A stretch of 64,000 nucleotides of DNA from the sequence record MH494197.1. One strand, written 5' to 3'. Shown here piece by piece: positions 14,182 through 35,268 of this stretch. A program made the position numbers and the translations under genes. A model generated the notes under the pieces. The model was not told where the DNA came from, made no database searches, and worked only from the letters and a program-made list of their open reading frames with translations. The stretch's first letter is position 1. Every line of letters begins with the position of its first letter.

Positions 14182-14182
14182 A

Positions 14183-14719: not shown

Positions 14720-15866
14720 ATGTTACCTTTTGTAAGAATGGTTAAGTACGGGAATATTGCACCAGTACCGAAAAAATAAAGAAAGTTATAGCAGGATATG
14801 ATAATTTATATGTACTATATGGTGATGGTTCGCTATATGGTTGTGGAATCAATAACTATCAACAGTTAAATATTGATGGAACTGCTACACAAAATAATTG
14901 GGTACTAATTACCAATGGTGTTAGTAATGCATGGGCTGGTGGATACAATATTTTATATTTGAAAGAAGATAAATTTATAATGCACGGAACTAATGTCTCA
15001 TTAGGTTTAGGAAATACTACAATTCCATTAGGTGGAGTAGATGTAACTTCTTCATTCCCAGATATCTCTAATATTAAAATGATATCCATTGGTTTTGATT
15101 CAATGCACTATGTTAGTGCTGATGGTACAACTGTATATGGAAGAGGTATGAACACAAATGGTTCTGTTGGTTCAGGTAGTACTTACTCACAGAGTACTTT
15201 CACTTCAGTACTGAATAATGGAACTAATCAGGTTATTGATATATTTGGTAACGTTAATAATACAGTGCTTCTAACATCGAATGGTGAGCTTCGAGCATGT
15301 GGGACAAGTGCTTATGGTTCTATAGGAAATGAAACTGGTAAGTGGACATCGTTTGGTTTAAAATTATCTGGCACTAAAATAATGGGTGGTAATGGGTATA
15401 GTACGCTTGCATATACAAATTCGGGAATGTACCACTCAGGGTGGCAGTTAAATGGGGAACTAGGAAATGGTTTAGATACTAACGTACAGGTATATCCATT
15501 TCAATTTAACTCTAAAACGATAGATAGCAAGATAGATAAAATTGCCAAATCATCATCTGGGTCATATGTTAACATGTACTCAACAACAGAAGGAAAGATA
15601 TATACGACAGGTTCGTTTGGTAAAACGGGTCAACTACTGCATTGAATTTGTTCACCAATACATTAACACTTATAAATTACAATCCAGATACCGCCTCGTT
15701 GTATACGTGCACAAACTTCAGTGTTGTGTATGATGGTAATGAAACTATTGCTGTAAGTGGTAGTCCTACATATGTACCGAGGGCGTTGCCGCTAATAGAT
15801 GGACTACAATTCCATTACCCAAGTAATACTATGCCAGTACTTGATGCTGGCTTTTCTTTTGATTAA
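14720..15866 (+). CDS. Leader-tagged RCC1/BLIP-II-like beta-propeller protein #1 (frameshifted)
   Basis: Hybrid leader MLPFVRMVKYGN; the body is closely similar to #13; LYGCGxN..QL and GWQLNGELGNG repeats. Confidence 0.8.
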
Positions 15867-15893
15867 ATATAGTATAATGAATAAGGAGGAATT

Positions 15894-17017
15894 ATGTTAC
15901 CTTTTGTTAGAATGTTTGATTATGGGAATATAATCGAAGTTAATAATATAAAGAAAAGTGTTGTTAGTTACACTCTTGAAATGTTTCTAATGCAAGATGG
16001 CACTGTATATGCACACGGTGAAGATTCAAACTATAATGCGGGTTTAAGTACACAGTTTGTATCGTTAGGAGCAGTTCAACAAATCACAACTGAAGTTGAT
16101 GACTTATGGTTAGGATCGTTTTCCGTTGTTATTAAAGGTGATAAAATATATGGTTCAGGTTCAACATATGCATTCACGAATTCTAATACTTTCCAACAAG
16201 GATATACTGACTGGGCTGTGTATTTCACTGGTATAGATGTTACCCAAATTAAAAAATGTTATGTGGTTATACAGCATTTATATTAATGAAAGACGGAACA
16301 CTTTATGGAAGAGGATGGAATCGAAGTGGTACATTAGGTTTAGGACATAAAAATTATGTTTCAGCGTGGACTGTACTTGACACTAATGTGGATAATATAT
16401 TTGGCGGTTACCTTGGCGATACATTGTTTAAGATTAAAAACGATGGAACTGTATATGGTTCAGGTTCAAATAACAGCTTTCAAGTTAAAGCAACATCGGG
16501 TGATGCAACCACATTTGTTCCGTTGTTTGATGATATATCTTATGATATAAAATGCAGTTTTGTTTCTGGTGTTGGTTTTGTAATGATAACATCTGATAAT
16601 AAAATATATGCAACTGGAACTACTTTTGCTGGTAGTGGTGCACATAGTAAAGTTTTTGATGTTGGTTTTACTATAGGTGATATGAGTAATATATATCATC
16701 CTGATTCGTTGGACTATTCGACTAGTGTTGTATTTTTAATTAATGCAGATACAAACAAACTAATAGCAACTGGGCATACCCATTTACGGAAGTAGTTCAA
16801 GTTCCTTCCATATTTTACAGCATTTCAAGAATTCAATTTTACATCGTTCAATTCGAATACACGATATAGTGGGTCTTTATACTGGAATACATTTTACGAA
16901 GGTAATAATGTATGGATGAATGGATATAATCCTGAAAATACGGGTGGAAAGAATTTCTCATTGTGTTCAATACCGTTAGATACTATTATTACTAAGCAAA
17001 TTGATTTACCTTTTTGA
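15894..17017 (+). CDS. Leader-tagged RCC1-like protein #2 (frameshifted)
   Basis: MLPFVRMFDYGN; LYGRGWNRSGTLGLG repeat. Confidence 0.8.
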
Positions 17018-17087
17018 ATACTATGCCAGTACTCAAGTACTGGCTTTTATTTTATTAAATATAGTATAATGAATAAAGGAGGGAAAT

Positions 17088-18273
17088 ATGTTACCTTTTG
17101 CAAGAATGGTTAAGTACGGGAATAAACAGCCTATTCCTGAACCAGTTGAGTTCACTGATGTTTTACAGCAACATTATACTAATGCTATGTATCTACATAA
17201 GCCCACGAATACACTATACGGTTATGGTGGTAATAACTTGAGCCAATTAGGTCTAGGGAATCAATCGACAGTTTCTACTTTTACAGTACTGGCAACGCAC
17301 TGTGCAGCCTTTTGGTTAGGCGTTCATGGCTCATTGATGATTGACTTGGATAATAGAATATATTTCACAGGGAATACAGTAGCATTCCCCGATTATGGAG
17401 ATGCAACTCCAGTTAATGGTTATTTTAGAACATGGACTGATGTTACTGCCGCATTTGACAAAATAAATGTACACGCTAATTTAATCAAGAGTGTACATAT
17501 AGGTGAAAGTACTAGAATATTACTACACGATGGAAGAGTAGTTGTTTGTGGTAAAATGCAAATGCCGAATGTGGAACAGGTAACCAAAATCCCATACCAG
17601 TACTAACAGTTGTTACTGGTATGGGTGAAGTTCTCAATTGGCGTGTTCATTACAGGGTACGCACTATCTCAAAACAAATAAAGAAGCATGGTTTTGTGGT
17701 AAGGATAACTTTGGTGAAAGTGGTGCTGGGACTAGCTCATACGTTTTACTAATAAGTTAATACGATCCAACGTCGATTATATAAGTGCTACTTATGATGT
17801 TACGGTGGTTCACTGCCGGTAGGGTGTACTGGAGTGGTAGAAACAATTCTGGACAAGCTGGGAATGGTACTACTTCAACCACAAACCAATTAACTACAGT
17901 TCAGAATTCACAGGTTATAGTGAATATTAGTGATGGTTTCCTGTGTCCTAGTAATATGGGTAACTCAACAATTGGTGCACCTATGGCTCAATACCCATCA
18001 TATGTCAGAGTGCAGGCATCAATACATATGGTCAAGAAGGGACGGAAATACAACAGTAATTACTTCGTGGGGGCGTTTTCTTTAAGTGCGATACAGGGTG
18101 GATATGACAATGTTCTTATGGCATCCAAAGACTGGTCCAGAACAATAATTATAACTAAAGATTATAAATTATATGCATGTGGGGGCTTTAACGGTTCAGG
18201 TGGTAACTTACCGGATGGTACTTCCGTAATTAAAACATTAACATTAATGCCAACGCAGTTATGGCAATCATAG
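17088..18273 (+). CDS. Leader-tagged RCC1-like protein #3 (frameshifted)
   Basis: MLPFARMVKYGN; LYGYGGNNLSQLGLG and YWSGRNNSGQAGNG repeats. Confidence 0.8.
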
Positions 18274-18282
18274 GAGAAAATC

Positions 18283-19404
18283 ATGTTACCTTTTGTTAGA
18301 ATGTTTGATTATGGAAATGAAGCACCTGATCCTAGTTCGGGATTTCGAATAATAAGTACAGGAGACGCATTACTATTAATTACTAAGAGTGGTGATTTGT
18401 GGGTGCGTGGTTATAACCGTTATGGCAAGTTAGGTATAGGTAATAACACCACTACCTATGTACTTGATTGGACGAAGGTTAGAAGTGATGTAAAGTTTGC
18501 GTGTGGTAGTGGATTGGTAACAGTTATCTTTACTAAGGGTAATCGCATATTGTACTGTGGTGACAAATGGTTTGAAACGGGTGGTGTTGGTAGTGCACAG
18601 ATTTTCACATGGACAGATGTTACGCACCAATTTGGGGCAGTAGATTTGAGTACAGTAAGGGATATGAAAATGTCTTATTACACGATTGGATTATTGACTA
18701 CTAATAATCAATTATACGCTAAGGGATATGATAATAACCTATCATTTGGTGGGGTTAGTAATAAGGCGACTGCTGTGTTTATTGCGAATAATGTACAAGA
18801 GTTGTATACGAGTTTAGTTAGTACAATCTACGTTGATACAAGTGGTATATTACATCGTTGTGGCATGAGTGATAACGGTTCGTTGGGTAATAATGTTAAT
18901 TTAACTTCGTATCTAAGTTATTCACAGACTGGTATGACGATTAAGGACATTGGAATGATGACTACGAACACTGGGTTATTATATACTGATTCTAGTGCAC
19001 GCACGAGATATTTTATTGCTGGACAGAACTTGAATAAACAGATGGGTAATGCGGCGGCTGCGAGTGCCATTACGAGTACTTACACAGAGCTTTCTGGTAG
19101 TGTTGATAAGTTTTCTTCTTTATGGGCGAATGATGGGATATTGATGACATTTGCTGTGGGTAAGAACACTAATCAGTTATTTTATGCTGGGATGAATACT
19201 TTTCATGCGAGTGGTGGTGTATCTTCATATGCGGATACATATGAGTTAGTCCCGATGGTGTTTAATGACATACAGGAAGTGTTATGTGCACAGCGTTTAT
19301 CGGTGGTACATGATTCTACGAAGTGGTATTACTGTGGTGATGCTAATTCAATGTATGGTTTACCGGACGTAAGTACTTTTACTGAGTTACCGTTGCCCTT
19401 TTAA
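18283..19404 (+). CDS. Leader-tagged RCC1-like protein #4 (intact, 373 aa)
   Basis: MLPFVRMFDYGN; LWVRGYNRYGKLGIG and LHRCGMSDNGSLG repeats. Confidence 0.9.
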   Translation: MLPFVRMFDYGNEAPDPSSGFRIISTGDALLLITKSGDLWVRGYNRYGKLGIGNNTTTYVLDWTKVRSDVKFACGSGLVTVIFTKGNRILYCGDKWFETGGVGSAQIFTWTDVTHQFGAVDLSTVRDMKMSYYTIGLLTTNNQLYAKGYDNNLSFGGVSNKATAVFIANNVQELYTSLVSTIYVDTSGILHRCGMSDNGSLGNNVNLTSYLSYSQTGMTIKDIGMMTTNTGLLYTDSSARTRYFIAGQNLNKQMGNAAAASAITSTYTELSGSVDKFSSLWANDGILMTFAVGKNTNQLFYAGMNTFHASGGVSSYADTYELVPMVFNDIQEVLCAQRLSVVHDSTKWYYCGDANSMYGLPDVSTFTELPLPF

Positions 19405-19476
19405 TAATAGGTCAGTACTGAAATATGTACTGGTATTTTTGTAAATACTATATAATTTAATTACGGAGATTTTATT

Positions 19477-20653
19477 ATGTTACCTTTTGTTAGAATGTTT
19501 GATTATGGGAACGTCGTTGAGCGACCTGTGGGTACACGTTATACCTGTAGTGACTATAGTGCGACTTATAGTTTAATAAAGGATGGTGTGTTATATGTAT
19601 CTGGGATGAATAACTATTATCAGTTAGGTAATAACACTAACGTAACACGTTACAACGAGTGGTTAAAAGTTCCAGAGACTGATAGTGTTAAGTTTTGTAG
19701 TACTGGTTATAGTCAGACAATGTATATTACTAACAATGGGAGGATAATGATAGCTGGTGAAGATCCTACTTCCAGTGCGACGGCGGTAAGTGTTAAGGTA
19801 TGGACTGATATAACTTCTAGATTTAGTGCAGTTGATACAAAGAAGATTGTTTATATTTCAATAGAACGCTTTGGTGTAATGATGATCATGCAAGATGGTT
19901 CAGTATGGGCGTGTGGAGTTGATAATACTGGTTGGAGTGGGCAGGAAGTAAAACTGTTGGTTTCTTTACTTTCAGACAAATATACACCGGAAGTGCAGGA
20001 AGTGCAGTTGCTGGTACTGCTGGTACTGGTACTGCGAGAATTCTGTTAGCTAATGGAACAATCTTGTCCGCTGGTACTAATACATATCATCAATGTAATG
20101 CTAGTACTGATCCGGCTGTTCTAACATTCACTGAATCATTCCACGGGTTGATCCTTCATTGATATATCAAATCAAGATGTGTAATAACAACTGTATTATA
20201 TTTTGAGTGATAAGAGATATTACGGTACTGGCTGGGAAGTTTTGGTGCATTGGGTGATGGTGATATTACGGGTTCGAATAATAAATTCTATGCAGGTACA
20301 TTGTCAGTTGCTCCTAAAACATGCGTGCTTATATGTCGTATCTATGTAGTTCTTCTGGGGATTCTAGTATGTACATAGGCGATGATAATTTCATATACAC
20401 CTGCGGTTATCGTGGGAGGAACTTAATAAATGCCACTACAGATATTGGTACGTTCACGAAATGCATTCAAAGTGCACAAGGATACAAGAATGGACTTATA
20501 TATAGTGGGAATTATTGTGCTGTAGTTTTTGATCCAGATTTGGGTTCAGGAATGTCATATGCGGTTTCATCACCAAAATTGAATGCACCAGCACCACAGG
20601 CGAGTGTTCCAACATTGGGTATGAGTTCGTTACAAGCTATTATTTTACCATAA
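19477..20653 (+). CDS. Leader-tagged RCC1-like protein #5 (frameshifted)
   Basis: MLPFVRMFDYGN; LYVSGMNNYYQLG repeat. Confidence 0.8.
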
Positions 20654-20726
20654 CATTATACCAGTACTGAAATATGTGCTGGTATTTTTTTAAATACATT
20701 ATAATTATTATATGGAGATTTTAGTT

Positions 20727-21851
20727 ATGTTACCTTTTGTAAGAATGTTTGATTATGGGAATACAGTGGCTGCTCCCACTGGTATAAAGGATTTCAAGCA
20801 AATGGAAGCCACTGTATGGCACTAACATATAGTGGTGAGATGTGGGCTTATGGTACAAGTACAAGTGGATCAATGGGAACCGGATTCACGGTGGGTGCTG
20901 CTGATAAGGGTTGGTACAAGTCTAACATTAGTAATGTTAAATCATTCAGTTCTAATATGCAGACTAGCACAGTGGCTTTGACAAATGATGATAGAGTGCT
21001 AGTTTGTGGCTCAACTAGATTTGACAAATTCAGTACTCCAGATATTGCATCATCTAACCTTGATTGGTTGGATGTTACTGATCATATTCCACAGGAAGTT
21101 ATTGATGCTGGGATGAAGCAAGTTATTAACCACGTATATTATGTTGCCATTTTACTGAAAACAATCTATTATATAGTGTGGCATTATCTTTGGGTAATAC
21201 TAGTACTATAATAGATAGAACATGGAGAAGAAATACATTTGGTGATATACAAGTTGAACGTGTTGTTTCGTTGACACAAACCCCAAGTGGTCCTTTGTGT
21301 ATAGTTCAAGATGCAGACGGATACCAGTATGGTATTGGATATAATGGTAATAAGATTATTGATAATACTTCCACTAATTCATATTCTGTATATACCAAAA
21401 TGGGTACACTTCCTTACAATGAATTTGCCATATCGAATAGCGGGAAATTCAGTTCAGCGGTATTATCAGATGGGAGAAGTGTTTATAGTGGTACATTTCC
21501 AAAGTCATTCAATAATAGTTTTGGTTCATTTTGAAAGTTGGTGCGGTATCAGATACTGTGTTTGGTTTAGATGCAAAAATATGCGTGGTCAATATGGTCA
21601 AAATCAATTACCAATTGCGTCGGCTGATAACAATGCAAGTAATGGCGTTGTGAACCTTCGTAATGTTCCAGCGGGAACACAAACGAAAGACATTCGATTT
21701 ATATGCGGAAATGATGTAAAGAACGTTTATATCATATACACAAATGAAGACGGCATTAGCTCATTTTATGGATTGGGACCAAACTTTGATCAAAATTCCT
21801 CAACATATGCACAATTCGTCAAAGTGGATTTGCGGGGCATTATCAAATTAA
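20727..21851 (+). CDS. Leader-tagged RCC1-like protein #6 (frameshifted)
   Basis: atgttaccttttgtaagaatgtttgattatgggaat at 20727; MWAYGTSTSGSMGTG repeat. Confidence 0.75.
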
Positions 21852-21861
21852 GGAGAGAAAT

Positions 21862-22960
21862 ATGTTACCTTTTGTTAGATTGTTTGATTATGGGAATATC
21901 ACACGGTCCTAAAAATATAATTAAAGTTGGTGCTTCTACACAGGGTCAATTCTTATTGACAGATTCACATGATTTATATTACATAGGTAGAAATCAAGGT
22001 GGTGAATCTGGAAATGGAAATACCAACACAGTATCCTCATGGATATTAGTAAGTACAGATGTTTCTAATTTTTTCGTGGGTGATCGTACACTTGTTATTA
22101 TTAAAAATGATAATACGATATGGTCATCAGGTCAAACGTACTGGTTCACATCTTCCACAACTACTTCTTACAGTACTGTATTAGTTGATAGAACCAGTTG
22201 GTTTACCAATGCCATACCAGTAAGTGAAATTGCTGATATAGTATGTTCGTATGGTTTAATATTTGTACTTAGCACTAGTTCAGTACTCTATGGTGCAGGG
22301 CTAATGGATATCGTGGTGCTTTAGGTATTGGTTCATCATCAATTTACACATTAACTCAATGTGCTACTAATGTGCGTAAAGTAATGACGAATGCAAATGA
22401 CAGTATGTATATTACATTAGATAATAAGTTATATAGTTCTGGGTGGAATGACCGTGGATTACATGGCACAGGAACAGAACACAAGTTAACATTTGGGGAC
22501 TGCGTAGTTCTGGTGTAATAGATGCAGCTATTGGTGGACATACACTCAATTACTATAATGGTACATCATATTTCACATGTGGTACAACTCCAAACTTTCT
22601 TAGTTCAGATTCAACTACATTCAAAGCAGTTCCTGTAAGTACTTTACCTAATAATTCACCTTTGTTTATGACAAATTCAGAGGCAACAAGCACGGCTACG
22701 CAAATTATATTAACTAGTGCATATCAGAAAGGTATTGGAAACCGTGGTTTGGGATTAAACAATTCTCAAACGGTGCTATCTATAGTGCTGCTAATTTACA
22801 ATTACCTGTAGAAGTTAGTGAGATTAGTGATGTTGCTTTTAGTGACGGATTAACATCATTATTAACCAAAGACGGAATGTATATAGTACTGGATCGTATT
22901 ACGCCATTCCGTGCAAGTGCAGATGTTGCAGTCTTTACTAAAATTGATTTACCAAAATAA
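21862..22960 (+). CDS. Leader-tagged RCC1-like protein #7 (frameshifted)
   Basis: Leader MLPFVRLFDYGN at 21862; LYYIGRNQGGESGNG repeat. Confidence 0.75.
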
Positions 22961-23028
22961 CATAATGCCAGTACTTGATACTGGCTTTTCTTTGGTTAAA
23001 TATAGTATAATGAATAAAGGAGGGAATT

Positions 23029-24198
23029 ATGTTACCTTTTGCAAGAATGGTTAAGTACGGGAATATTGCACCTGTTCGCCCTGAAATAAAGAAATTGGAT
23101 GGTAGTCAATTACATGTCGGATTACTATATAGTACTGGTAATATGTATATGCGTGGTTCTGGTTCGAACTACAAGTTAGGTACAGGTGATGCTAGTGATG
23201 TATTAGATGGTTGGGTACATGTACCCTATGAAGTTGATGATTTTTGGGCGTGTGTGTCCGGTACATTAATAAAGACTAAAGACAATAAGTTATATTGTGC
23301 AGGACTATACATGGGTGGATATTTTGGTGCTAGTGGTTCATATGTTAACTGGACTGAAGTAACTTCATTATTTGTGGGTATTAACGTCTCACAAATAAAG
23401 AATATAGAATTTACATCAGCGAGTACTTCCGGTAGTACACTAATATTGATGTTAGATGGTAGTTTATATGGGTTCGGTATGAACAGTAGGTCGGAGTTAG
23501 GTGTTAATAACAAAGTCGTATCTCCTATTCTTATAGATACTGGGGTAAGTTCAATAGGAGCACATAAATTAGGTGGTTCATCGTTCCATTATATAAAAGA
23601 CGGTAAGTACTACAGATGTGGGACCGCGATTGGTAGTAATATAGGAAGTTCTTCTTTAACTACATTTACTGAATTGAGTATTGCTGATAATGTTATATCT
23701 ATGCAAATATTATTTGACAACGTACAGTTATTATGTTTTGGTAGTACTGGATATAGTATCTATATGGCTGGTTCTAATGATTATGGTGGAAGAGGTGTTG
23801 GTGGTAGTACTGTTTACACTACATTCAGGAAAATAGATCTTACTGGATTTGGTGTTGTTCCCAGTGAAATACTATTTGAAAATGCAGGGAATGGTTATGT
23901 TAATATATCAACTGATAGTACTGGCATATATACATGTGGTGGTGGTGCTGGTGTTAATGGTTTAGGTAGACCGAGTAATGTTATATCAAGTTCACAGTTG
24001 GGTTTGATTGAGTTCAGTACAGGATTATACCCAGCAAATATAAGTCGTGTATTTTCACAGAGTTCATCTTCTGTTATATATTGTATAGTTAATAATGAAT
24101 TGTACTGGGCTGGGAGTAATTCATATTTTACTGATCAAACTACAAATACTGGTACACAATTTTCATTTATTAAGATGAAGGATATGCCTTCTGCTTAG
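23029..24198 (+). CDS. Leader-tagged RCC1-like protein #8 (intact, 389 aa)
   Basis: MLPFARMVKYGN; MYMRGSGSNYKLGTG and LYGFGMNSRSELG repeats. Confidence 0.9.
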   Translation: MLPFARMVKYGNIAPVRPEIKKLDGSQLHVGLLYSTGNMYMRGSGSNYKLGTGDASDVLDGWVHVPYEVDDFWACVSGTLIKTKDNKLYCAGLYMGGYFGASGSYVNWTEVTSLFVGINVSQIKNIEFTSASTSGSTLILMLDGSLYGFGMNSRSELGVNNKVVSPILIDTGVSSIGAHKLGGSSFHYIKDGKYYRCGTAIGSNIGSSSLTTFTELSIADNVISMQILFDNVQLLCFGSTGYSIYMAGSNDYGGRGVGGSTVYTTFRKIDLTGFGVVPSEILFENAGNGYVNISTDSTGIYTCGGGAGVNGLGRPSNVISSSQLGLIEFSTGLYPANISRVFSQSSSSVIYCIVNNELYWAGSNSYFTDQTTNTGTQFSFIKMKDMPSA

Positions 24199-24265
24199 AT
24201 TTTATGCCAGTACTCTGTACTGGCATTTCTTTATTAAATATAGTATAATGAATAAAGGAGGAAAT

Positions 24266-25420: not shown

Positions 25421-25488
25421 TAAAAGCCAGTACTCTGTACTGGCATTTCTTTGTATTAAATATAGTATAATGAATAAAGGAGGGAATT

Positions 25489-26626
25489 ATGTTACCTTTT
25501 GCAAGAATGGTTAAGTACGGGAATATTGCACCAGTTCCGGTAGTTCCTACAATAAAAGATTTTAAGATTGGATTTTCACATGAAGTGTTATTGGACAGTG
25601 CAGGTGATGTATGGGGTATTGGATACAATACAGATGGGCAGTTGGCTTTTTGGATGCAAACACCAATTCATTAGGTGCGTGGTCTAAGATATATACTGAT
25701 GTTCGATTAATTGGAGTTACTGCTAGATATACAGTGGTAGTTACTAATAATAATAGAATACTATACGCAGGAAATAACTTAATTTCTAGTACTACCACTC
25801 TTGGGTGGACCGATATAACTACCAGTATGGGTCCGGTTGCGGTGGATAGCATCGATGCATTATATTGTACAGAGGGTATGATGCATATTAAAACTTCAGA
25901 TGGTTCTTTATATGCATATGGTCGTAACATGAACGCAAACAGTGGTGTTACTGGTGGTGTTATTAGTGTTGCAACTAAGGTTAATTTGCCTTCTGCTGTA
26001 AATGACATGCGATATACGTTTAGTTATGGTTCAGTACTATGTAGATTGGATACGACTTCTATATACGCATGGGGACGAAACATAAATGGTGAATTAGGTC
26101 AGGGTAATGCAACAGCCATTGTTACTCCAAAACTATTGTCTGGTTCTTCTATTGCAATGGGTACTTCGTATAATGCTACTGCAATTGTTTCTGGTTCTGC
26201 ATTGTTGCTTACATGTGGTGGACAAAACAGTGGGCAGTTAGGTAATGGTATTACAACTGATGGTAATGTATACACCTTTGGTGTCAGGACATACCAGCGA
26301 TCTTAATACAATAAGAAGTCCAGTGGATTGCAGTACAACGTACACCTCTGCATTTATGAGTCCAGATGGTATATATTACACTGGTGCTAACCGAAGTATG
26401 TTTGGTGGTATTAGTGGTGGTGCTACCGTTGGAATATATACTAAATGTAGTGATTTACCAATAACATATTCTAATATAATTCAGTGGAGTAGTGGTACTA
26501 TTGGTGGTGCTATATGTAGTAGTACAGAGTTATACCAATGTGGTATAGGTAGATACATTGCTGGTGATGGTGCGAGCACAACCGTATGGATTTAGGAAGA
26601 CACCATTACCTTGGGATACTTATTGA
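25489..26626 (+). CDS. Leader-tagged RCC1-like protein #10 (frameshifted)
   Basis: MLPFARMVKYGN; IYAWGRNINGELGQG and TCGGQNSGQLGNG repeats. Confidence 0.8.
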
Positions 26627-26695
26627 CATTACGCCAGTACTTGATACTGGCTTTTCTTTTGATTAAATATAGTATAATGAATAAAGGAGGGAATT

Positions 26696-27884
26696 ATGTT
26701 ACCTTTTGTTAGAATGTTTGATTATGGGAATATCACACCTGAACCTCTTCAAATTAAGAAAATAATACCAACTGATACTGAGGTTGTTGTACTTTATACC
26801 GACGGTCAACTATACGCACGAGGCAGTAATAGTTATGGGAAGTTTGGTAGAGGAAATAATAATGCAGTAAGGTCGTGGACATTAATTAGAGAAAATGTCA
26901 AAGATTGCTGGATGACACAAGGAACTTTGTTAGTTCAAGATAAGGACTTAAATTATTTTTATTGTGGATATGGTAGTCATATTGGTTTAGAAACTAGTAC
27001 TACATCATTTTTAAGTTATAACCAATATATTGAAAATTTGTACACACAAAGTTCAGGTACTTCAATTAAACAGATGTATGCAGGTACTACTTGGTTTACT
27101 TTCTTAATGGATAATAATACAATATGGAGTACTGGTTGGAGTGGGGCTAGACAATTCGCTGATGGTACTGGTAGTACTCAACAAATAACAGATGGATCAT
27201 TTGTAAAAGCTGTCACGCCTAATGTTGATATTGCACGAATACAGTCAACAAATAGCTGTGTAATGTTTTATGATACACAAAATAATTTATATATTGGTGG
27301 TAGTACATCAGGTATAAGTACTACTGATACATGGACTCCATACAATCAATATACTTTATATCAGCCAAGTACAACATATACAAAAACATTACAATATGTT
27401 GTATGTACAATTGGTGCAGTCAGTGCTTTAGTGGAGAATCCAAGTACAGGAGCACGTCAGTTCCTAGTGGGTGGGAACGCCAATAATGGGGCATGGGGTA
27501 ATAACACTACGTCTAGTACAGCACGAGCAGTATTAGGAAATAATAGTACAACCTTACCACCGTACTTTGTATTCAATTCATACTGGATACCCAGCACAAT
27601 CTAGTATACTAGTTACGAGTTCTGGTGTATATGCAACAGGTTTAAATGCGAGTAGTTATGCTGGTTCATTGGGTGTTGGTTCTAATGTTACCATTGGTAA
27701 ATTTACTGCATGTCCATTGCCGTCAGAAATAACATATTCTATGTATGATAAAATAAAAATATATCGAGGGTCGTTACGTACTTTCCTAACTGCTGATATG
27801 AAAAATATATATTCAACCGGAACTTATGATGATGGTGGTCCTAGTACAAATAGATATGTACTGGATACACCTAGACAATTGTAA
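26696..27884 (+). CDS. Leader-tagged RCC1-like protein #11 (one frameshift)
   Basis: MLPFVRMFDYGN; LYARGSNSYGKFGRG repeat. Confidence 0.85.
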
Positions 27885-27948
27885 AAAAGCCAGTATCAAG
27901 TACTGGCTTTTCTTTGTTAAATATAGTATAATGAATAAAGGAGGAATT

Positions 27949-28683
27949 ATGTTACCTTTTGCTAGAATGGTTAAGTACGGGAATAAAATTGAATATAAGC
28001 CACATGGTGAACAATTAATCACGACAATAGGAACAACACAATTTACAGTTCCTGCTGGCGTTACCGAAATATCAGTATGTGTTATTTCGCCGGTGGTCAA
28101 CGTGGTGCTGGCGGCGGCTTATCGTGGCGTAATAATATTCCGGTTTCTGGTGGTGAGTACTTAAGTGTTTCTCTTACATCCCAACACTACTACAGCAGTT
28201 GAAAACGGTTTATATCGTGGAACTGAAAAACTATGTGTTAGCTTCACTGGTGCATATACGGTTGGTGGACTAGGTGGAAAAGCTGCTAACGCTATTAATG
28301 ATGGTGGTGGTAATGGTGGCAACACTGGTTTAAGTGGTGGTGCAGTCATTGGTGGTGGTGCTGGTGGCTACACTGGTAAAGGTGGTAACGGAAATGCAAT
28401 CACTGGTGAAAATGGTGCTGGGGGCGGCGGTGGTGGTGGTGCATTCTATAATACCTCGTTCATTGGTACGGGTGGTGGTACTGGTATCATTGTTCAAGGT
28501 GCTAATGGTATTGGTGGTAGCTACGATGGTTCATATAATGGTGGTGCTGGTAGTGGTGGTGCTGGTAATAGGTATGGTGGTGGTGGTAGTATATGGGATA
28601 ATTCTTCTTATACGGCGGCTGGTGGTGGTGCTGTGCGAATAATATGGGGACGTGGGAGATATTATCCTAATAATTCAGTCTAA
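27949..28683 (+). CDS. Leader-tagged glycine-rich protein #12 (not a propeller)
   Basis: MLPFARMVKYGN, then FTVPAGVTEISVCVI and GGxG-rich repeats ending GGGAVRIIWG, typical of Gly-rich domains on phage fibre/structural proteins. Confidence 0.8.
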
Positions 28684-28752
28684 AATATAGGCCAGTACTT
28701 GATACTGGCTTTTCTTTGAATTAAATATAGTATAATGAATAAAGGAGGAAAT

Positions 28753-29866
28753 ATGTTACCTTTTGTTAGAATGTTTGATTACGGGAATATTGCACCTGAA
28801 GCTCCAAAGATAAAGAAAGTACTGTGCGGTCTTGATAATTTGTACGTCCTCTATGACGATGGCTCACTTTATGGTTGTGGGGTTAATTCGTATTTTCAGT
28901 TAAACGTTACAAATACAGCAACAAGAAATACTTGGATATTAATTTCAGAAGGTGTTACTGATGCATGGGCTGGGGCGTACAATATTCTTTATATCAAGGG
29001 TGAAGAATTCATAATGCATGGAGTTACCACACAATTAGGCACAGGAAATACTATGATTCCGTTGGGTGGTTTGAATGTTACTTCTTCATTTCCACATATA
29101 TCTAATATTAAAATGATATCAATCGGTGCAGATACAATGCACTACGTTGATGCTAGTGGTTCGATTGTTTATGGTAGAGGCATGAATGGTAACTATTCAC
29201 TCGGTGGTGGGTATTCCACGGCTCAGAGTACTTTTGTTTCAGTTATTAATACCGGAGCTAATACAGTCCTTGATATATTGGGTACACAGAATAACACATT
29301 AATATTAACATCAAATGGTGAACTTCTCGGTTGTGGGAGTAGTGAGTATGGCTCACTTGGCGTAAGTCAAGGACAGTATACTACACTAGTAAGCAGGTTA
29401 ACCAGTGTTAAACTGTTTGGTGGTAACAGTACTGGTACTCTTGCTTATTCAGCCAGCAATATATACAACGCAGGTTGGCAGTATGTTGGTCAACTTGGTA
29501 ACGGTATTACAACGAACACACTAGTATATCCATTTGCATTTAACTCCACTACTATTGATAGTAACATACATAAAATATCAAAATCAAGTACATCTTCACG
29601 TGTTAATATGTACGCAACAACCGAAGGAAAGATATATAGTACTGGTGAATTTGGTAGAAATGGTTCTGGTGGTAGTTTGAGTAGATTCACCAATACACTA
29701 ACTTTAGATAATTACAACCCAGAAAAATCAGCATTATACACATGTGCACATTTTAGTATAGTATTTGATGGTAATAATCAAATTTATGCTTGTGGTTCTT
29801 TTTGTATGTGCGTTCTATTACCACGAACTCATGGTCTGCAATTACAATGCCGAAATGATACTATAA
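28753..29866 (+). CDS. Leader-tagged RCC1-like protein #13
   Basis: MLPFVRMFDYGN; nearly intact, close paralog of #1. A late indel lets the ORF track run to 29907. Confidence 0.85.
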
Positions 29867-29936
29867 AACTATGCCAGTACTTGATGCTGGCATTTCTTTT
29901 GTATTAAATATAGTATAATGAATAAAGGAGGAAAAT

Positions 29937-31070
29937 ATGTTACCTTTTGCAAGAATGGTTAAGTACGGAAATAAAAGACCATCTAATAATATCAAAAGAT
30001 TTCATGTACAACCAATAACAGTGTTTTGGTGCTCACCGAAAGTGGAGATTTGTATGGTTTTGGATTCAATTCAGGTGGTGAACTTGGCACTGGTGCAAAA
30101 CTAGTGTTACTTCAGTTATTCAAATTGACACTGGAGTTGATGATGTATGGGGTGGTAGTCTATGTGCAATGTACAGAAAAGGCGATGAATTCTTTGGCAG
30201 CGGGACGGTTCTTATTATGGTTCAAGTGCTGTTAACTCAACCACATTTGTAAATGTAACACACATATTCCAAGATATAGATATTCTTAATATTAAGAAAA
30301 TTAAAATGACAACAGGTTTGTTTATATTAATGCAAAACGGCAACTTATATGGATGTGGGGTAAACACCAATTGTCAATTTGGTACTGGTGAGGCAGTGAA
30401 TTTTCGTTATCCTATAGCTACATTAACACAAACGGATGTTGTTGATTTTGATATTTTAGGAAACTCTAGTATAATATTAAAGACCGATGGGTACATGTAC
30501 AGTGCGGGTGATAATGGTCGTGGACAACTTGGTAGTTCTACTGCAACCACACTTCTGGTATATACACAAATTAGTAAATTTCCAAACGTAACCAATTTGG
30601 ATCTGTTCGGACACTCACAAGTTACTTCATTATTCAAAGATAGTGATGGTAAAACGTGGTTGAGTGGTAATAGTTATGGTATTGATTACCCAGTAGTAGC
30701 TACAACATTATTCAGTAAAGAAGCACCAGTACCTGAAGGTACATTTCGTTTTATCAACACAAGGGCAGGGTCAAATACACCAATAATATGTACACCCACT
30801 GGGTATTATGTTGCTGGTACTAACCCTTATGGTGCATATGGTATAGGTACGAATGTAACTCTGACAACATTCACAAGAATGGATTCTATGGATAGATACA
30901 TATCTGATTATAATAATGTTCCTGTTTTCGATGGATGTTTCTATGGGACATATTTTGCAGTTGGGGAACGTCTGTTTGGTGCAGGTAATGGTAATACTGG
31001 TAATGTTCCGGATATACTGGATCACAGCGTAACTATGTGGAAATTAATTATAAAAATAATTAAACCTTAA
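29937..31070 (+). CDS. Leader-tagged RCC1-like protein #14 (frameshifted)
   Basis: MLPFARMVKYGN at 29937; MYSAGDNGRGQLG and LYGCGVNTNCQFGTG repeats. Confidence 0.8.
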
Positions 31071-31138
31071 TACTATGCCAGTACTTGATACTGGCTTTTC
31101 TTTGGTTAAATATAGTATAAAGAATAAAGGAGGGAATT

Positions 31139-32308
31139 ATGTTACCTTTTGCTAGAATGGTTAAGTACGGGAATACTATACCCAAACCCGCTGGTGTGAA
31201 GAAAATTAGTACTTCCATTAATCACGTTGGGATGTTATTCGATAATGGAAATTTATATCTACGTGGGGTGGTGGTGAGTATAAGTTAGGAAATGACAGTA
31301 CTGGATTCGTACAGAATGGTTGGGTTAAGTGTCCATATAGCGTTGCTGATGTTTGGTGCTTCACTTACGCGACAATTATACTTACTACAAGTGGTGAATT
31401 ATACTTAGCTGGACAATTGGGTTATGTTGGTGTAGTTGCAGCGAGCGTACGGATGGACTAATATTACATCTAATTTATCCTCAATACCTGCACTTAGTAC
31501 TATACAAAACATAGCTTATACTGAGACTACAATTTACAATGGTGCTATATTAATTTTGTTAAGCAACGGGGACTTATATGGTATAGGTCGTAATGGTGGT
31601 GGTGTATTAGGCGTTTCTGGAATCCAATCAACTGCACTTAAGATTGACACAGGTGTTACTTTAATTGCTGGCACAGACCGTTCAGCGGCGTTACATTATG
31701 TGAAAAATGGTCAATACTACAGATGTGGGAATAATTCTCGCTACAACCTAGGAACAAGCTCTTCTGTTTTATCTACATTTACGGTAAGTACAGATATCAC
31801 AGGAACCGTACTGGGATTGCATGTACTACAAATGCGACTTCAGTACTGACATCATATAATGGTACTATTAGAGTGTATAGTGCTGGGACGAATACCGATT
31901 ATACGTTAGGTATTGGTTATGGAGATACCAGTATAATAATGAGTCCATTTAGTGCTACACCTCCAATTTATGGTATTGTACCAGATGCGGCATCACTGAA
32001 TAATTCTTGTATTAATTCTAATATGATTGCGATGACACAGGGTGGTAAATTGTATACATGTGGTAATGGTGTTGCTCTTGGTAGAGAAATCACTGCATCG
32101 ACACCTAGAACGGCGTACTATCCAGTACTATTTGAGGATTCAAATACTGCACTTGATGTTAATGCTTTTGCAGTGCAGGGGGTTCCGGTGTGTTATACGC
32201 ATTAGTGGGGGCAAATGAGGTTTACTGGTGTGGTAGTGGTTCTATGTTCCGGAACAGAGTGCAGGTACACAACAAGTTAAAATGAAGAAAATGATTTTAC
32301 CAGAATAG
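31139..32308 (+). CDS. Leader-tagged RCC1-like protein #15 (frameshifted; paralog of #8)
   Basis: MLPFARMVKYGN at 31139; LYGIGRNGGGVLG and YYRCGNNSRYNLG repeats. Confidence 0.8.
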
Positions 32309-32317
32309 GAGGAAAAT

Positions 32318-33449
32318 ATGTTACCTTTTGCAAGAATGGTTAAGTACGGGAATATAAAAGTAAAGAGTACTATCCAAAAAGTTATCCTTGGTGGTGGTGG
32401 TCAATGTGTGGTAACATTACTCAGTGATGGTAGAGTGTATGGACGTGGATACAATACAACATATGGGTTGGGTACTGGTACAACAACATTCGTAAGTGAT
32501 TGGGTATTAATGGGCGATAATATTGTTGATATCCATTCAAATGGTGTTACTGGCACATTCCTTATTACCAAAGAAAATAGAATTTTGTATTCTGGTTTTG
32601 CGACACCAATCAATGGCACAACATCACATTATACACGTTTCACTGATTTAACATCAACTGTATTTGCTGCGGTGGATGTTAGTAATATTAAAACAATTAC
32701 GGGAAATGGTAATGTTACAATGGTTCTTTTGAATGATGGTTCACTTTATGGGAGTGCAAATACAGGGTTATAGGTAATGGTAGTAACGTTGCATTATCAA
32801 CACAAACATATGTGACTAATGATGTGCGTGATGTGAAAACATATCCATCAATGAACACTATAACAAAAATAATAATCAAATATTGGCTAGTGGTATTTTA
32901 TACCAAGGCGTGAACGGTACAAATTCATCAATAAACACGTCTTCATATACATTACTGTACACATTACCGAGTTCTGATTGTTTTCAATTTGCATTTGATA
33001 CATATACATTTGGATATGTTGACCCTAGTACTAACACTTCTTATATAAGAGGTATACCAATAAATGGTTCATTAGGTAATGGCGTTACTAATAATACAGC
33101 AGTTACAACATGGGTTACTAAAGTTTGGAATACACCAATTGATAGTTCTATACCTAATAAATCATATACAACTAACCATGTCTCCTTGTTCAATGATGGA
33201 AACTTATGGACAACTGGTGCATCTAGTGTCGGCTATTCCAATGGTACAAATAGCACAACAGCTAATACATGGACCAGTTCATCTAATTTACCATTCAACA
33301 CTAATAACATAACAGACTATGCTTTTGGTGGTAGTATTACTGTGGTGGTAATCGACTATAGGACTATGTACATACTAGCTAACAACGCCATTGCTGGTAC
33401 TGCTACGACAACTTATAAATTTGAGCCATATAATTCTCCACCAGTTTAA
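32318..33449 (+). CDS. Leader-tagged RCC1-like protein #16 (frameshifted)
   Basis: MLPFARMVKYGN; VYGRGYNTTYGLGTG repeat. Confidence 0.8.
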
Positions 33450-33479
33450 TATAATGCCAGTACTATGTACTGGCTTTCT

Positions 33480-33857
33480 TTACATATTATATAATGTGAA
33501 TGCTGTCACTTTACCAGTTGTTGTTAGTTCATTATAAAGATACTCCAATATTCTCGCACACTCTAAGTATATCTCGATATCATCATGAATAAGTGAGTAC
33601 TGAAATAGCTGTTCTTCAGATAATTTGTATTGACTTCCTTTTAATGAATTGAGAATATCTTTCACATCATCAAGTACTGGGTAAAGTACGAAATCTTCAT
33701 CATATTTTGAAGCAATAAATTCAAATCCACCACCATCAGTACTAGATATACCAATCAGTACTTTATCAACCAAGTTAATGTTTATATAACGGTTGTGATT
33801 TGGGTGAATTGAAATCTCAAACATACGAGTACTGTTACAATCAACATCAATATACAA
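33480..33857 (-). CDS. Hypothetical protein (125 aa, EEQLFQYSL motif)
   Basis: Intact ORF inserted in opposite orientation within the array. Confidence 0.75.
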   Translation of the reverse strand: MYIDVDCNSTRMFEISIHPNHNRYININLVDKVLIGISSTDGGGFEFIASKYDEDFVLYPVLDDVKDILNSLKGSQYKLSEEQLFQYSLIHDDIEIYLECARILEYLYNELTTTGKVTAFTLYNM

Positions 33858-33903
33858 ATATACATCGTTGAATTTATAAGTTAAGCAACCGTACTCAAGA
33901 AAA

Positions 33904-34128
33904 TCAGAGCAAATAATTGATGAGTTTTTCTCGTCTCTGCGTAATGCATCTTGATATTCTTTTCACGCATAAGTAATTCGAACTTTGCACTAAACTTGCC
34001 ACCAGTAAGATAATTAGTATTAGGACGTTTGTAACTTGCAACTGGTCGGTGGGATGATGTAAAGTATTTTTTGTGAATCGTTTCTGTTTAGTGAAATATT
34101 CTTGATAGAACTTACTTCTTTTATTCAT
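33904..34128 (-). CDS. Hypothetical protein
   Basis: ORF upstream of 33480-33857 on the same strand; probably has an indel. Confidence 0.55.
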   Translation of the reverse strand: MNKRSKFYQEYFTKQKRFTKNTLHHPTDQLQVTNVLILIILLVASLVQSSNYLCVKRISRCITQRREKLINYLL

Positions 34129-34205
34129 GAGTACCTCAATTAAATCGCTGTAAAATTGTACATTATAAAATGATTAAATAAAGTATAACACAAGGAGATT
34201 TTATC

Positions 34206-35268
34206 ATGTTACCTTTCGTATTGTTATTTGATTATGGGAACGAAAAACAAGAAAGTTCTTATGATGTTAGTGTATATGGAAACAATAACTACATTTTAAA
34301 TAAACAAACTGGAAACCTTTTTGCATCCGGTGCTGCGCATTCATGGGTGATAACACAGTTAAGTATTATATTACCCAAATAGAATCAAATGTTCATAGCT
34401 GTGAGATAGGTTTCCTATCATCATGGATAATTAAGAAGGACAAAACTGTTTTCATTTTAGGAAACAAAAGCAGTATTGGATTAACTGATTCGACAACATC
34501 ATGGTTCGAAATTACAAACTTATTTTCTGCTGTTCCTGAAATATGGGACAACCTATTTGAATGTAAAGTTCAATTGGGATATAACTGCATACGTGTTATG
34601 ACACCACTAGGATCAATATATGCGATTGGTACAAACACTTATGGTGCATTGGGTACTGGTACTACATCCTCATCCACTTCGTTCGTTAAAAGTGGTGCTG
34701 TGGATGCTGTACGCATGGAATCAACAGAACGTTCAGTGTTCTATCAAAACAGTTCTGGACAATGGTTTGGATGTGGTGATAACACATATGGTATACTAGG
34801 TCTAGGAACTACCGCTAGTCGTGTAAACTCATACACCGCACCAGTATGGACTAATGCAGAAGCTGTTAGCTTCTCTAACCGTGGATCATATACAGCCTCA
34901 ATGGTACTCTATACTCATGTGGTGACAAAGTTAATGGTCAGCTAGGGATGGATATACACAAAGCATAGACGCTGCCGAGCACACCATACACCATAGGAAC
35001 CGCATTCCAAATTGGTAAGGCAATAACATCAGCTACACAAGCATCAGCCAACGTATTCATTGGTAAAGATAATAAGTTCTATGGTACTGGTAGTATTGCT
35101 GCTGGTATAAATGGTAGTACTAGTGCTGCATTAAGTAAAGTTACTGCGTTATCAGCATCACTACCACCTGACATTACATACAATGATATTATATCATTTA
35201 ATACAGGGACCGTAACTTTTATTCAAGCAAAGGACAACTATATTATGTTGGTAGAAGAACTTACATAG
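34206..35268 (+). CDS. Leader-tagged RCC1-like protein #17 (degenerate leader, frameshifted)
   Basis: MLPFVLLFDYGN at 34206; IYAIGTNTYGALGTG and WFGCGDNTYGILGLG repeats. Confidence 0.75.

What the first reader, a model, noticed from the sequence alone, without database searches (positions are those of the whole stretch)
14720..35268. 17-gene array of diverse beta-propellers, all carrying the same 12-residue N-terminal tag and mostly their own expression cassette
Seen: 17 genes spaced ~1.2 kb apart start with MLPF(A/V)RM(VK/FD)YGN, conserved at the DNA level. The ~370-aa bodies are highly divergent RCC1/BLIP-II-type propellers rich in Ser/Thr/Gly/Asn/Tyr. Most are separate transcription units with a shared terminator-promoter-RBS. 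Established: RCC1/BLIP-II propellers are protein- or glycan-binding scaffolds. Inference: the invariant tag is a docking or assembly signal that loads interchangeable binding heads onto one site (virion fibre, collar or capsid, or a secretion/processing partner), making a plug-and-play adhesin or effector library. The paralogs may already be annotated as hypothetical proteins in related phages; I do not recall the tag or cassette logic being described.
Basis: partly seen in the sequence, partly recalled or inferred. Interest (0 to 1): 0.9.

Follow-up and report, generated by a model that had tools for sequence, protein, structure and literature searches.

The report
Tagged binding-protein array in jumbo phage
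A giant E. coli phage carries 17 tandem genes for very different binding proteins that all begin with the same 12 amino acids; related giant phages put this tag on several unrelated protein folds that turn up in their particles, so it most likely directs these proteins into or onto the virion.

Summary
The window is Escherichia phage CMSTMSU (Asteriusvirus, 386 kb). The 17 tag starts and the repeated hairpin/promoter-like/RBS cassette are real. In this record only 3 of the 17 genes are uninterrupted. The other 14 are broken, mostly by frame changes, and the same indel density lies outside the array, so this is sequencing error; the relative fEgEco12 has the array intact. Sixteen bodies are RCC1-like propellers and one is a glycine-rich domain.

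The tag is constrained as protein. In Salmonella phage Munch its synonymous sites are near saturation (pS 0.63) while the five core residues barely change (pN 0.019). AlphaFold places it as a free N-terminal extension. Across RaK2-like jumbo phages the same tag heads RCC1, Kelch, ConA-like/LamG, glycine-rich and unknown bodies. Published proteomics of four phages finds such proteins in virions.

The best reading is a lineage-specific virion-incorporation peptide on interchangeable binding modules, with whole genes and 5' ends shuffled at PeSL-like cassettes. Where it docks, outside or inside the capsid, is unresolved. The array and its virion association were already known; the tag, its independence of fold and its spread across genera were found in no paper searched.

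The parts
14720..15832 (+). tagged gene 1, RCC1-like; broken in this record; orthologue of fEgEco12 g594
   Evidence: 100% nt identity to g594 over the body
15894..17017 (+). tagged gene 2; broken; no DNA-level counterpart in the fEgEco12 array
17088..18273 (+). tagged gene 3, RCC1-like; broken; orthologue of g591, but in a different slot of the array
18283..19404 (+). tagged gene 4, RCC1-like, uninterrupted (373 aa); no cassette upstream
   Evidence: (PF25390)
19477..20657 (+). tagged gene 5, RCC1-like; broken; orthologue of g592
20727..21851 (+). tagged gene 6; broken; window-only relative to fEgEco12
21862..22960 (+). tagged gene 7, RCC1-like; broken; orthologue of g590; no cassette upstream; 5' end mosaic against 121Q
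23029..24198 (+). tagged gene 8, RCC1-like, uninterrupted (389 aa); window-only relative to fEgEco12; the protein modelled
24266..25425 (+). tagged gene 9, RCC1-like; broken; orthologue of g589
25489..26632 (+). tagged gene 10, RCC1-like; broken; orthologue of g588
26696..27884 (+). tagged gene 11, RCC1-like; broken; orthologue of g587
27949..28683 (+). tagged gene 12, glycine-rich body and not a propeller; broken; orthologue of g586
   Evidence: phrog_4474; PF21722 in the Munch orthologue
28753..29907 (+). tagged gene 13, RCC1-like, uninterrupted ORF (384 aa); runs through the downstream hairpin, unlike its orthologues; orthologue of g585; 5' end mosaic against 121Q
29937..31070 (+). tagged gene 14, RCC1-like; broken; orthologue of g584
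31139..32285 (+). tagged gene 15; broken; window-only (fEgEco12 has the unrelated g583 in this slot)
32318..33449 (+). tagged gene 16, RCC1-like; broken; orthologue of g582; no cassette upstream
34206..35324 (+). tagged gene 17, RCC1-like with the most deviant tag; broken; orthologue of g580
   Evidence: (fEgEco12 copy: PF00415, PF25390)
14673..14719 (+). promoter-like box plus RBS ahead of gene 1 (no hairpin)
15833..15893 (+). cassette: hairpin, T-run, promoter-like box, RBS
17025..17087 (+). cassette
19411..19476 (+). cassette, variant sequence
20658..20726 (+). cassette, variant sequence
22967..23028 (+). cassette
24204..24265 (+). cassette; the only one that also passes the sigma-70 two-hexamer scan
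25426..25488 (+). cassette
26633..26695 (+). cassette
27885..27948 (+). cassette
28689..28752 (+). cassette
29871..29936 (+). cassette
31077..31138 (+). cassette
33456..33474 (.). two-way hairpin between gene 16 and the opposite-strand gene
33480..34128 (-). neighbour inside the array: orthologue of fEgEco12 g581 (hypothetical, no Pfam hit), untagged, broken in this record

Best explanation
The first 12 residues are a lineage-specific N-terminal virion-incorporation peptide. A short proline-rich linker joins it to interchangeable binding domains. In this phage those are 16 RCC1-like propellers and one glycine-rich domain; in relatives they also include Kelch propellers, ConA-like/LamG lectin folds and unknown folds. 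Each paralogue is made from its own or a shared transcript and is recruited to the particle at low copy through the common peptide. The most likely site is a common docking site on an external virion component, where the bodies would act as accessory adhesins.

The library evolves by duplication and divergence, and by homologous exchange at the repeated junction of about 110 nt (terminator hairpin, promoter-like box, RBS, tag). That exchange moves whole genes and swaps 5' ends.

Shown: protein-level constraint on the tag; independence of the tag from the body fold; a predicted free N-terminal position; published detection of tagged proteins in virions; whole-gene differences and 5' mosaics between relatives.

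Inferred: that the tag is what causes incorporation; the partner; the external location; the adhesin role.
For: 1. Constraint. Over 53 array genes picked by adjacency in five phages, the column shares are M1 100%, P3 100%, F4 100%, Y10 96%, N12 94%, G11 88%, R6 73%. In 25 tagged RCC1 proteins of mean identity 33%, the only invariant columns besides propeller glycines are tag positions. In Munch, tag codons 2-12 give pS 0.63 and pN 0.135; the five core residues give pS 0.71 and pN 0.019.

2. Position. In the AlphaFold model (pLDDT 87.6, pTM 0.89) residues 1-10 have pLDDT about 50 and the first strand starts at residue 20. PDB profile matches start at position 18-23.

3. Fold independence. The tag heads RCC1, Kelch, PF13385 ConA-like/LamG, PF21722 glycine-rich, RCC1+Kelch fusions and unknown bodies in XbC2, GAP32, CBB, Munch and uncultivated contigs of 348-378 kb.

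4. Always at the N-terminus. About 59 of the 67 hits among 1.84 billion representative proteins carry it at the first residue, or just after a mis-called start.

5. Lineage specificity. Homologous LamG and glycine-rich bodies in phages of about 150 kb lack this tag and share a different N-terminal peptide.

6. Virions. phAPEC6 has 8 members detected. GAP32_001 is reported as detected, and GAP32_002 is annotated a virion structural protein. In CBB, CBB_247, 548, 549, 551, 552 and 553 are detected with up to 50.7% coverage. In JP4, 577, 581 and 582 are detected.

7. Shuffling. Against fEgEco12, 13 genes are shared, 4 are window-only, 2 are fEgEco12-only and one is relocated. Two genes are 94-97% identical to 121Q in the first 300 nt of the body but only 78% in the tag and 52-60% upstream. 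121Q has only the K-type tag on bodies that carry the FD type here.

8. External role. The bodies are binding folds. Laminin G3/ConA-fold lectins of jumbo phages are described as associated with tail fibres and other virion components (PMC7824862). One RCC1-like fold match is a protein annotated as a tail fibre of Pseudomonas phage Littlefix. Short N-terminal docking peptides of 7-11 residues are known for receptor-binding proteins (PMC6872550).
Against: No experiment links the tag to incorporation.

Peptide counts for the RCC1 members are low (1-5 in phAPEC6, 1-2 in JP4). The phAPEC6 virion list also holds clearly non-structural enzymes, so some carry-over is possible.

No docking partner was identified and no virion density has been assigned.

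The genes do not lie in the tail-fibre module but between blocks of small early-looking genes.

The timing of the promoter-like box is unresolved. It has a full TATAAT hexamer, only a weak upstream hexamer inside the hairpin, and a 10-mer shared with a TATAAATA-type promoter upstream of a virion gene.

An internal (packaged) location fits all of the proteomics equally well.
Confidence: 0.55

Rival explanations
1. The tag is a capsid-targeting signal of the T4 kind. The tagged proteins are loaded into the prohead through the scaffold, sit inside the head (possibly in or near the inner body), and are ejected with the DNA. That would make them a library of protein binders acting inside the host, for example against defence proteins.
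For: [quoted passage not shown] These phages have T4-type head genes, including a prohead protease. 121Q and phAPEC6 have an inner body. Virion proteomics cannot tell inside from outside. The genes lie outside the tail module.
Against: No conserved acidic cleavage-type site follows the tag. Columns 13-20 are variable and proline-rich, which suits a tether better than a processing site. The bodies are folded propellers and lectin folds of 200-400 aa, with median pI of 5.8-8.3, and so are not basic DNA-associated proteins. ConA-like, Kelch and glycine-rich domains are typical surface-binding modules. Homology to the T4 peptide was not tested.
Confidence: 0.2
2. The proteins condense or organise the packaged DNA, as their database names ('DNA condensation protein', 'regulator of chromosome condensation') and the phAPEC6 paper suggest, and the tag is incidental.
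For: The phAPEC6 authors propose this on the strength of the RCC1 name and the inner body. The proteins are found in virions.
Against: The name comes from eukaryotic RCC1, whose chromatin binding is not a property of the fold; the nearest folds also include UVR8, RPGR and HERC2. Median pI per phage is 5.8-8.3 (about 6 in fEgEco12 and Munch). The same tag sits on lectin, Kelch and glycine-rich bodies. Each paralogue is of low abundance.
Confidence: 0.07
3. The 36 nt are conserved only as nucleic acid, either as a translation-initiation region or as the recombining end of the cassette, with no constraint on the peptide.
For: In this phage the tag DNA is nearly uniform within two haplotypes and is continuous with the repeated upstream cassette. 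The 5' ends are exchanged as units.
Against: In Munch the synonymous sites of the tag are near saturation while the residues are kept (pS 0.63 against pN 0.135; core residues 0.71 against 0.019). Many Munch genes also lack the cassette and are translationally coupled. The peptide is kept in XbC2, CBB and GAP32, where the upstream DNA differs.
Confidence: 0.03
4. The tag is a structural part of the propeller, for example a closing strand.
For: N-terminal strands close many propellers (established knowledge of the fold).
Against: It is predicted as a low-confidence extension ahead of the first blade. It lies outside the region that matches solved RCC1-like domains. It is present on non-propeller bodies.
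Confidence: 0.02
5. The array is a decaying set of pseudogenes.
For: 14 of 17 genes are broken in this record.
Against: Indel density is the same outside the array, and half the indels are in homopolymers. The whole window is fragmented and the record is flagged UNVERIFIED. The arrays are intact in fEgEco12, Munch, XbC2 and CBB.
Confidence: 0.03

Closest known systems
Capsid targeting sequence of the T-even internal proteins (PMC3012670)
   Same: A short N-terminal peptide is the only thing shared by an otherwise highly diverse, fast-evolving set of virion proteins in T4-related phages. The tag is separable from its cargo.
   Different: No sequence relation was tested. Here no cleavage-type site follows the tag. 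The cargoes are large folded binding domains with near-neutral pI. An internal location is not shown. The genes form one tandem array of up to 17.
N-terminal 'conserved peptide' docking of secondary receptor-binding proteins (Klebsiella phages, K1-5/SP6, the phiK64-1/RaK2 group; PMC6872550)
   Same: Peptides of 7-11 residues at the extreme N-terminus, specific to a phage group, attach interchangeable specificity modules to a common virion site. phiK64-1 and RaK2 are described as Rak2-like relatives of 121Q, GAP32 and CBB (PMC5259590).
   Different: Those bodies are trimeric tailspikes or depolymerases encoded in the tail-fibre module, and they dock on T4gp10-like domains. Here the bodies are propellers and lectin folds encoded elsewhere, and no partner is known.
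PeSL composite terminator/promoter cassettes of T4-like phages (PMC2839356, PMC4122927)
   Same: Repeated stem-loop plus promoter units lie between genes of a variable region. Close relatives differ by gain, loss and replacement of whole genes at these units.
   Different: Here the repeat runs on through the RBS into the first 36 coding bases, so it also carries the protein tag. The promoter class is unresolved.
RCC1-like 'DNA condensation' proteins of Rak2-like phages (GAP32_001; 121Q_234-248; 11 in phAPEC6; PMC5259590, PMC7247149)
   Same: These are the same gene family and the same array. Their multiplicity and their presence in virions are already reported.
   Different: Those papers treat them as RCC1 homologues with a possible role in DNA condensation. 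They do not mention the shared N-terminal peptide or its presence on non-RCC1 neighbours.

Membership tests
RCC1-like domain propellers (PF00415, PF13540, PF25390) | RCC1 repeat signatures in the sequence | tested here: met
   PF13540 or PF00415 score above the curated cut-off in several members. PF25390 hits are significant but below its cut-off. PDB profile hits to RPGR, HERC1/2, UVR8 and RCC1 reach E 1e-33.
RCC1-like domain propellers (PF00415, PF13540, PF25390) | Seven-bladed propeller fold | tested here: met
   AlphaFold model with pTM 0.89 and 26 strands. Foldseek TM-scores of 0.67-0.76 to UVR8, RPGR and HERC2 RCC1-like domains.
RCC1-like domain propellers (PF00415, PF13540, PF25390) | Chromatin binding or guanine-nucleotide exchange activity (the source of the 'condensation' name) | not testable with these tools
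   A near-neutral pI gives no support for this activity.
   No BLIP-II chain appears among the 34 sequence hits or the 50 best listed fold hits. Lower-ranked fold hits were not inspected.
T4-type capsid-targeting-sequence proteins | A short N-terminal peptide shared by otherwise unrelated virion proteins | tested here: met
T4-type capsid-targeting-sequence proteins | A prohead-protease processing site directly after the peptide | tested here: not met
   Columns 13-20 are variable and proline-rich. No conserved acidic residue is present.
T4-type capsid-targeting-sequence proteins | Location inside the capsid and ejection with the DNA | not testable with these tools
   The published proteomics does not distinguish inside from outside.
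T4-type capsid-targeting-sequence proteins | Sequence relation to the T4 peptide | not tested
Docking-peptide receptor-binding proteins (PMC6872550) | A group-specific short N-terminal peptide on several specificity proteins of one phage | tested here: met
   A different peptide sits on homologous bodies in another lineage.
Docking-peptide receptor-binding proteins (PMC6872550) | A partner with a T4gp10-like branching domain | not tested
   No partner was searched for.
Docking-peptide receptor-binding proteins (PMC6872550) | Tailspike or depolymerase bodies encoded in the tail-fibre module | tested here: not met
   The bodies are propellers, lectin folds or a glycine-rich domain. The array is flanked by small hypothetical genes.
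PeSL cassettes | A stem-loop terminator directly followed by a promoter, repeated between genes of a variable region | tested here: met
PeSL cassettes | Differences between close relatives bounded by the cassettes | tested here: met
   Whole-gene presence/absence and relocation. 5' mosaics ending at the tag. Exact junctions were not mapped.
PeSL cassettes | Early sigma-70 promoter | tested here: inconclusive
   A full second hexamer but a weak first hexamer; only 1 of the cassettes passes the two-hexamer scan. The box partly overlaps a late-type motif.

The most novel reading that the evidence does not exclude
The tag is a head-packaging and ejection signal. The array would then be a library of up to 17 injected protein binders (propellers, lectin folds) that act in the host cell at the moment of DNA entry, for instance by neutralising defence proteins. 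This would be a jumbo-phage counterpart of the T-even internal proteins, on a much larger scale and built on binding scaffolds.
Probability: 0.18. Interest if true: 0.85.

Novelty: new variant of a known kind. Interest (0 to 1): 0.6.

Why it matters
Rak2-like jumbo phages (Asteriusvirus, Mimasvirus and relatives) are being collected as therapy and biocontrol candidates. Most of their genes have no known function, and the hair-like appendages and decorations of their virions are not assigned to any gene.

A 12-residue peptide that marks a whole class of virion-associated binding proteins, whatever their fold, gives three things:
- a simple sequence rule for finding these proteins; about 60 distinct clusters at 50% identity already exist in public data;
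- a correction to the misleading 'DNA condensation' annotation;
- a concrete handle for locating them in virion maps and proteomes.

It is also a clean natural example of a targeting peptide and its expression cassette evolving together as one recombining unit. A second, different peptide on the same bodies in another phage lineage suggests the principle is general.

Tried and rejected
- Alternative genetic code as the cause of the fragmented ORFs. Rejected: the breaks are mostly frame changes, and the indel density matches that of the flanks.
- 'CBB has hairs but no RCC1 homologue, so the family is not the hairs'. I first accepted this argument and then withdrew it, because CBB has at least 8 tagged genes with Kelch and LamG bodies. 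The hairs therefore remain an open candidate site.
- A conserved protease site after the tag. None was found.
- Promoter class. The sigma-70 scan is not enriched overall (79 sites against 101 expected), and the box is ambiguous between a -10-only and a late-type promoter. No transcriptome of this phage group was found.
- Literature search for the tag letters: 0 papers. The XbC2, fEgEco12, Sharanji and EJP2 papers say nothing about it.
- NCBIfam: no family for any of the five tagged bodies tried.
- phAPEC6 supplementary peptide lists are not held, so the N-terminal peptides could not be checked.
- No partner protein was sought, because complex prediction is not on offer.

Full report
IDENTITY AND STATE OF THE SEQUENCE

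The window matches Escherichia phage CMSTMSU (MH494197.1) at 100% identity. CMSTMSU is a 386-kb Asteriusvirus whose record is flagged UNVERIFIED_ORG. A six-frame search finds 17 + strand starts with the tag, at the stated spacing and nowhere else in the 64 kb.

Only three of the 17 are uninterrupted ORFs under table 11. The other 14 hold at least 30 frame changes and at least 3 in-frame stops in total (counts only). One of the three open ones differs in length from its orthologues in a way that suggests one more frame change.

This is not decay of the array, for four reasons:
- The whole window has only 22 ORFs of 150 aa or more.
- Indels against the close relative fEgEco12 run at about 6 per kb inside the array and 5 per kb outside.
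- Half of those indels lie in homopolymers.
- fEgEco12 has all 16 tagged genes intact.

Broken genes were studied through their intact pieces and through intact relatives.

THE OBSERVATION

The tag DNA comes in two linked haplotypes: 8 copies like the gene at 23029 (MLPFARMVKYGN) and 9 like the gene at 18283 (MLPFVRMFDYGN).

A repeat of about 110 nt runs from a GC-rich hairpin and T-run, through a promoter-like box and an AGGAGG ribosome-binding site, into the 36 coding bases.
- 13 terminator-like hairpins lie on the + strand, against 8.1 expected on both strands.
- The 23-nt box occurs 10 times against 0 expected.
- Three genes (18283, 21862, 32318) lack the cassette and follow their neighbour directly.

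Pfam, a PDB profile search and a fold search show that the bodies are RCC1-like seven-bladed propellers. The nearest solved folds are UVR8, RPGR, HERC2 and RCC1, and no BLIP-II appears among the listed hits. The gene at 27949 is the exception: it encodes a glycine-rich protein of about 245 aa.

IS THE TAG A PEPTIDE OR JUST DNA?

In this phage the DNA is too uniform to tell (pS 0.28).

In Salmonella phage Munch 17 array genes carry the tag, and many of them are translationally coupled without any cassette. NG86 on the 16 copies with the full motif gives synonymous differences near saturation, while the residues hold: pS 0.63 against pN 0.135 over codons 2-12, and pS 0.71 against pN 0.019 for P3, F4, Y10, G11 and N12.

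I also took 53 array genes by adjacency, not by tag, from fEgEco12, Munch, XbC2, CBB and GAP32. The column shares are M1 100%, L2 67% or I 32%, P3 100%, F4 100%, R6 73%, Y10 96%, G11 88% and N12 94%. After the tag comes a variable stretch with P at 45% of column 15 and 33% of column 17.

The peptide is under selection, and in Asteriusvirus the DNA is homogenised on top of that.

WHERE THE TAG SITS IN THE PROTEIN

An AlphaFold model of the 23029 protein was built from an alignment of 25 sequences and scores pLDDT 87.6 and pTM 0.89. Residues 1-10 have pLDDT of about 50, form at most a short helix, and precede a linker. The first propeller strand starts at residue 20. Matches to solved RCC1-like domains begin at profile position 18-23. 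The tag is therefore an appendage and not part of the fold.

THE TAG IS INDEPENDENT OF THE BODY

Related jumbo phages carry the same peptide on unrelated folds:
- Xanthomonas phage XbC2 has 11 consecutive tagged genes: RCC1, Kelch, ConA-like/LamG, an RCC1+Kelch fusion and unknown bodies.
- GAP32 has a LamG-type and an RCC1-type gene, plus a third at the end of the record.
- In CBB all seven genes CBB_548-554, and also CBB_247, are tagged, with Kelch, LamG or unknown bodies.
- Munch adds a glycine-rich and two LamG-type members.

A degenerate DNA pattern for the tag found 38 stretches in IMG/VR. About 70 of the matches start real ORFs, and nearly all of these lie in contigs of 348-378 kb. The rest are isolated matches, in about the number I estimate from the pattern's information content. 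Their bodies are again RCC1, Kelch, LamG, fusions and unknowns.

A 35-residue N-terminal profile was searched against 1.84 billion representative proteins and returned 67 hits at E of 0.001 or better. About 59 of them carry the tag at the first residue, or just after a mis-called start. The rest are unrelated long proteins and near-matches.

Homologous bodies outside this lineage lack the tag:
- The LamG-type homologue in phage 4MG starts differently.
- 37 of the 120 listed glycine-rich homologues share another short N-terminal peptide.
- In one E. coli phage contig of about 150 kb, the LamG-type gene and the glycine-rich gene begin with the same alternative peptide (MNEMLMLGQ... and MLEMLTVGK...).

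Two lineages with two different peptides on the same bodies is what an adaptor to a lineage-specific partner would look like.

VIRION ASSOCIATION (PUBLISHED DATA)

- phAPEC6: eight array members in the virion proteome, with 1-5 peptides each (PMC7247149).
- GAP32: GAP32_001 is reported as a structural protein found by mass spectrometry (PMC5259590).
- CBB: CBB_247, 548, 549, 551, 552 and 553, with 1-7 peptides and up to 50.7% coverage.
- JP4: three members (PMC12648861 supplement).

Detection therefore follows the tag across folds. One caveat: the phAPEC6 list also holds non-structural enzymes.

HOW THE ARRAY CHANGES

Against fEgEco12, 13 genes are shared at 92-100% nucleotide identity. Four are found only in the window, two only in fEgEco12, and the g591 orthologue sits in another slot.

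Two genes are 94-97% identical to their 121Q orthologues in the first 300 nt of the body, but only 78% in the tag and 52-60% in the 80 nt upstream. 121Q carries only the K-type tag, including on bodies that have the FD type here.

The cassette and the tag therefore move as one unit, independently of the body. This is the behaviour described for PeSL terminator/promoter cassettes in T4-like phages (PMC2839356, PMC4122927). The addition here is that the repeat reaches into the coding sequence.

MECHANISM AND ITS RIVALS

I commit to a lineage-specific virion-incorporation peptide on interchangeable binding modules. External docking is the more likely mode: 0.55 for the whole statement, and about 0.7 for incorporation alone.

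Reasons for preferring the outside:
- The bodies are surface-type binding folds (PMC7824862).
- The linker is proline-rich and holds no conserved processing site.
- The pI is near neutral.
- There is a precedent in N-terminal docking peptides of 7-11 residues on receptor-binding proteins, including in the phiK64-1/RaK2 group (PMC6872550).
- An RCC1-like fold match is annotated as a tail fibre.

The main rival (0.2) is a T4-like capsid-targeting signal. T-even internal proteins are described as diverse proteins that share only that signal (PMC3012670), and nothing here excludes an internal location.

The 'DNA condensation' reading rests on a name. The DNA-only, propeller-strand and pseudogene readings are contradicted above.

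The unassigned fibres and hexon-centre decorations of 121Q and phAPEC6 are candidate sites, but no more than that.

NOVELTY

Already known:
- the multi-copy RCC1-like genes of 121Q, PBECO4 and phAPEC6 and their detection in virions;
- targeting and docking peptides as a principle;
- PeSL cassettes.

Not found in the literature searched:
- this peptide;
- its presence on at least four folds;
- its spread over several genera;
- its co-transfer with the cassette;
- the parallel peptide in a second lineage.

I rate it a new variant of a known kind, with interest 0.6.

Noticed in passing
window 9800-14620, - strand: A second tandem array of about a dozen paralogous genes of 56-70 aa. Their N-termini are similar and aromatic-rich (for example MYKEFY..., MNTFEYY...). 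The array is divergent from the tagged array. fEgEco12 has a matching run of about 60-aa genes (g596-g613). [quoted passage not shown]
   Followed up: partly
whole window; compared with L003: The record has errors throughout: only 22 ORFs of 150 aa or more in 64 kb, and 5-6 indels per kb against fEgEco12, half of them in homopolymers. The GenBank annotation therefore consists of fragments. One CDS note there refers to a Mycobacterium tuberculosis protein.
   Followed up: yes
L050 459-1109 and 8001-8693; L047 6953-7603; P0047-P0090: In phages of about 150 kb (Vequintavirinae-like), the LamG-type and glycine-rich bodies carry a different shared N-terminal peptide of the M-x-E-M/L-L type. 37 of the 120 listed glycine-rich homologues have it, and other recurrent N-termini exist too. 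Group-specific N-terminal peptides on these bodies may be a general rule.
   Followed up: partly
L008 5350-5976 and 8256-9422 (XbC2_582, XbC2_586); P0046, P0058: A shorter variant of the tag keeps M-L-P-F-P but lacks the Y-G-N part. It occurs on a LamG, an RCC1 and two glycine-rich proteins.
   Followed up: no
L017 140-2158; L022, L038; L008 12478-14544: Tagged proteins of about 670 aa in which an RCC1-like propeller is fused to a Kelch propeller, found in several jumbo contigs.
   Followed up: partly
window 33480-34128, - strand: An untagged gene on the opposite strand sits inside the array (orthologue of fEgEco12 g581, no Pfam hit). Its N-terminus resembles those of the small paralogue family upstream. 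It is separated from gene 16 by a two-way hairpin.
   Followed up: no
L002 33950-33990 and 35200-35215, - strand: TATAAATA-type motifs lie upstream of two fEgEco12 genes annotated as virion structural proteins, one of them right after a hairpin. The array cassettes share a 10-mer with one of these motifs but differ in its first two bases.
   Followed up: partly
window 10001-34000: GC skew is positive from about 10 kb to 34 kb and negative elsewhere. The switch at 10 kb lies inside the - strand small-gene array, not at the start of the + strand tagged array.
   Followed up: no
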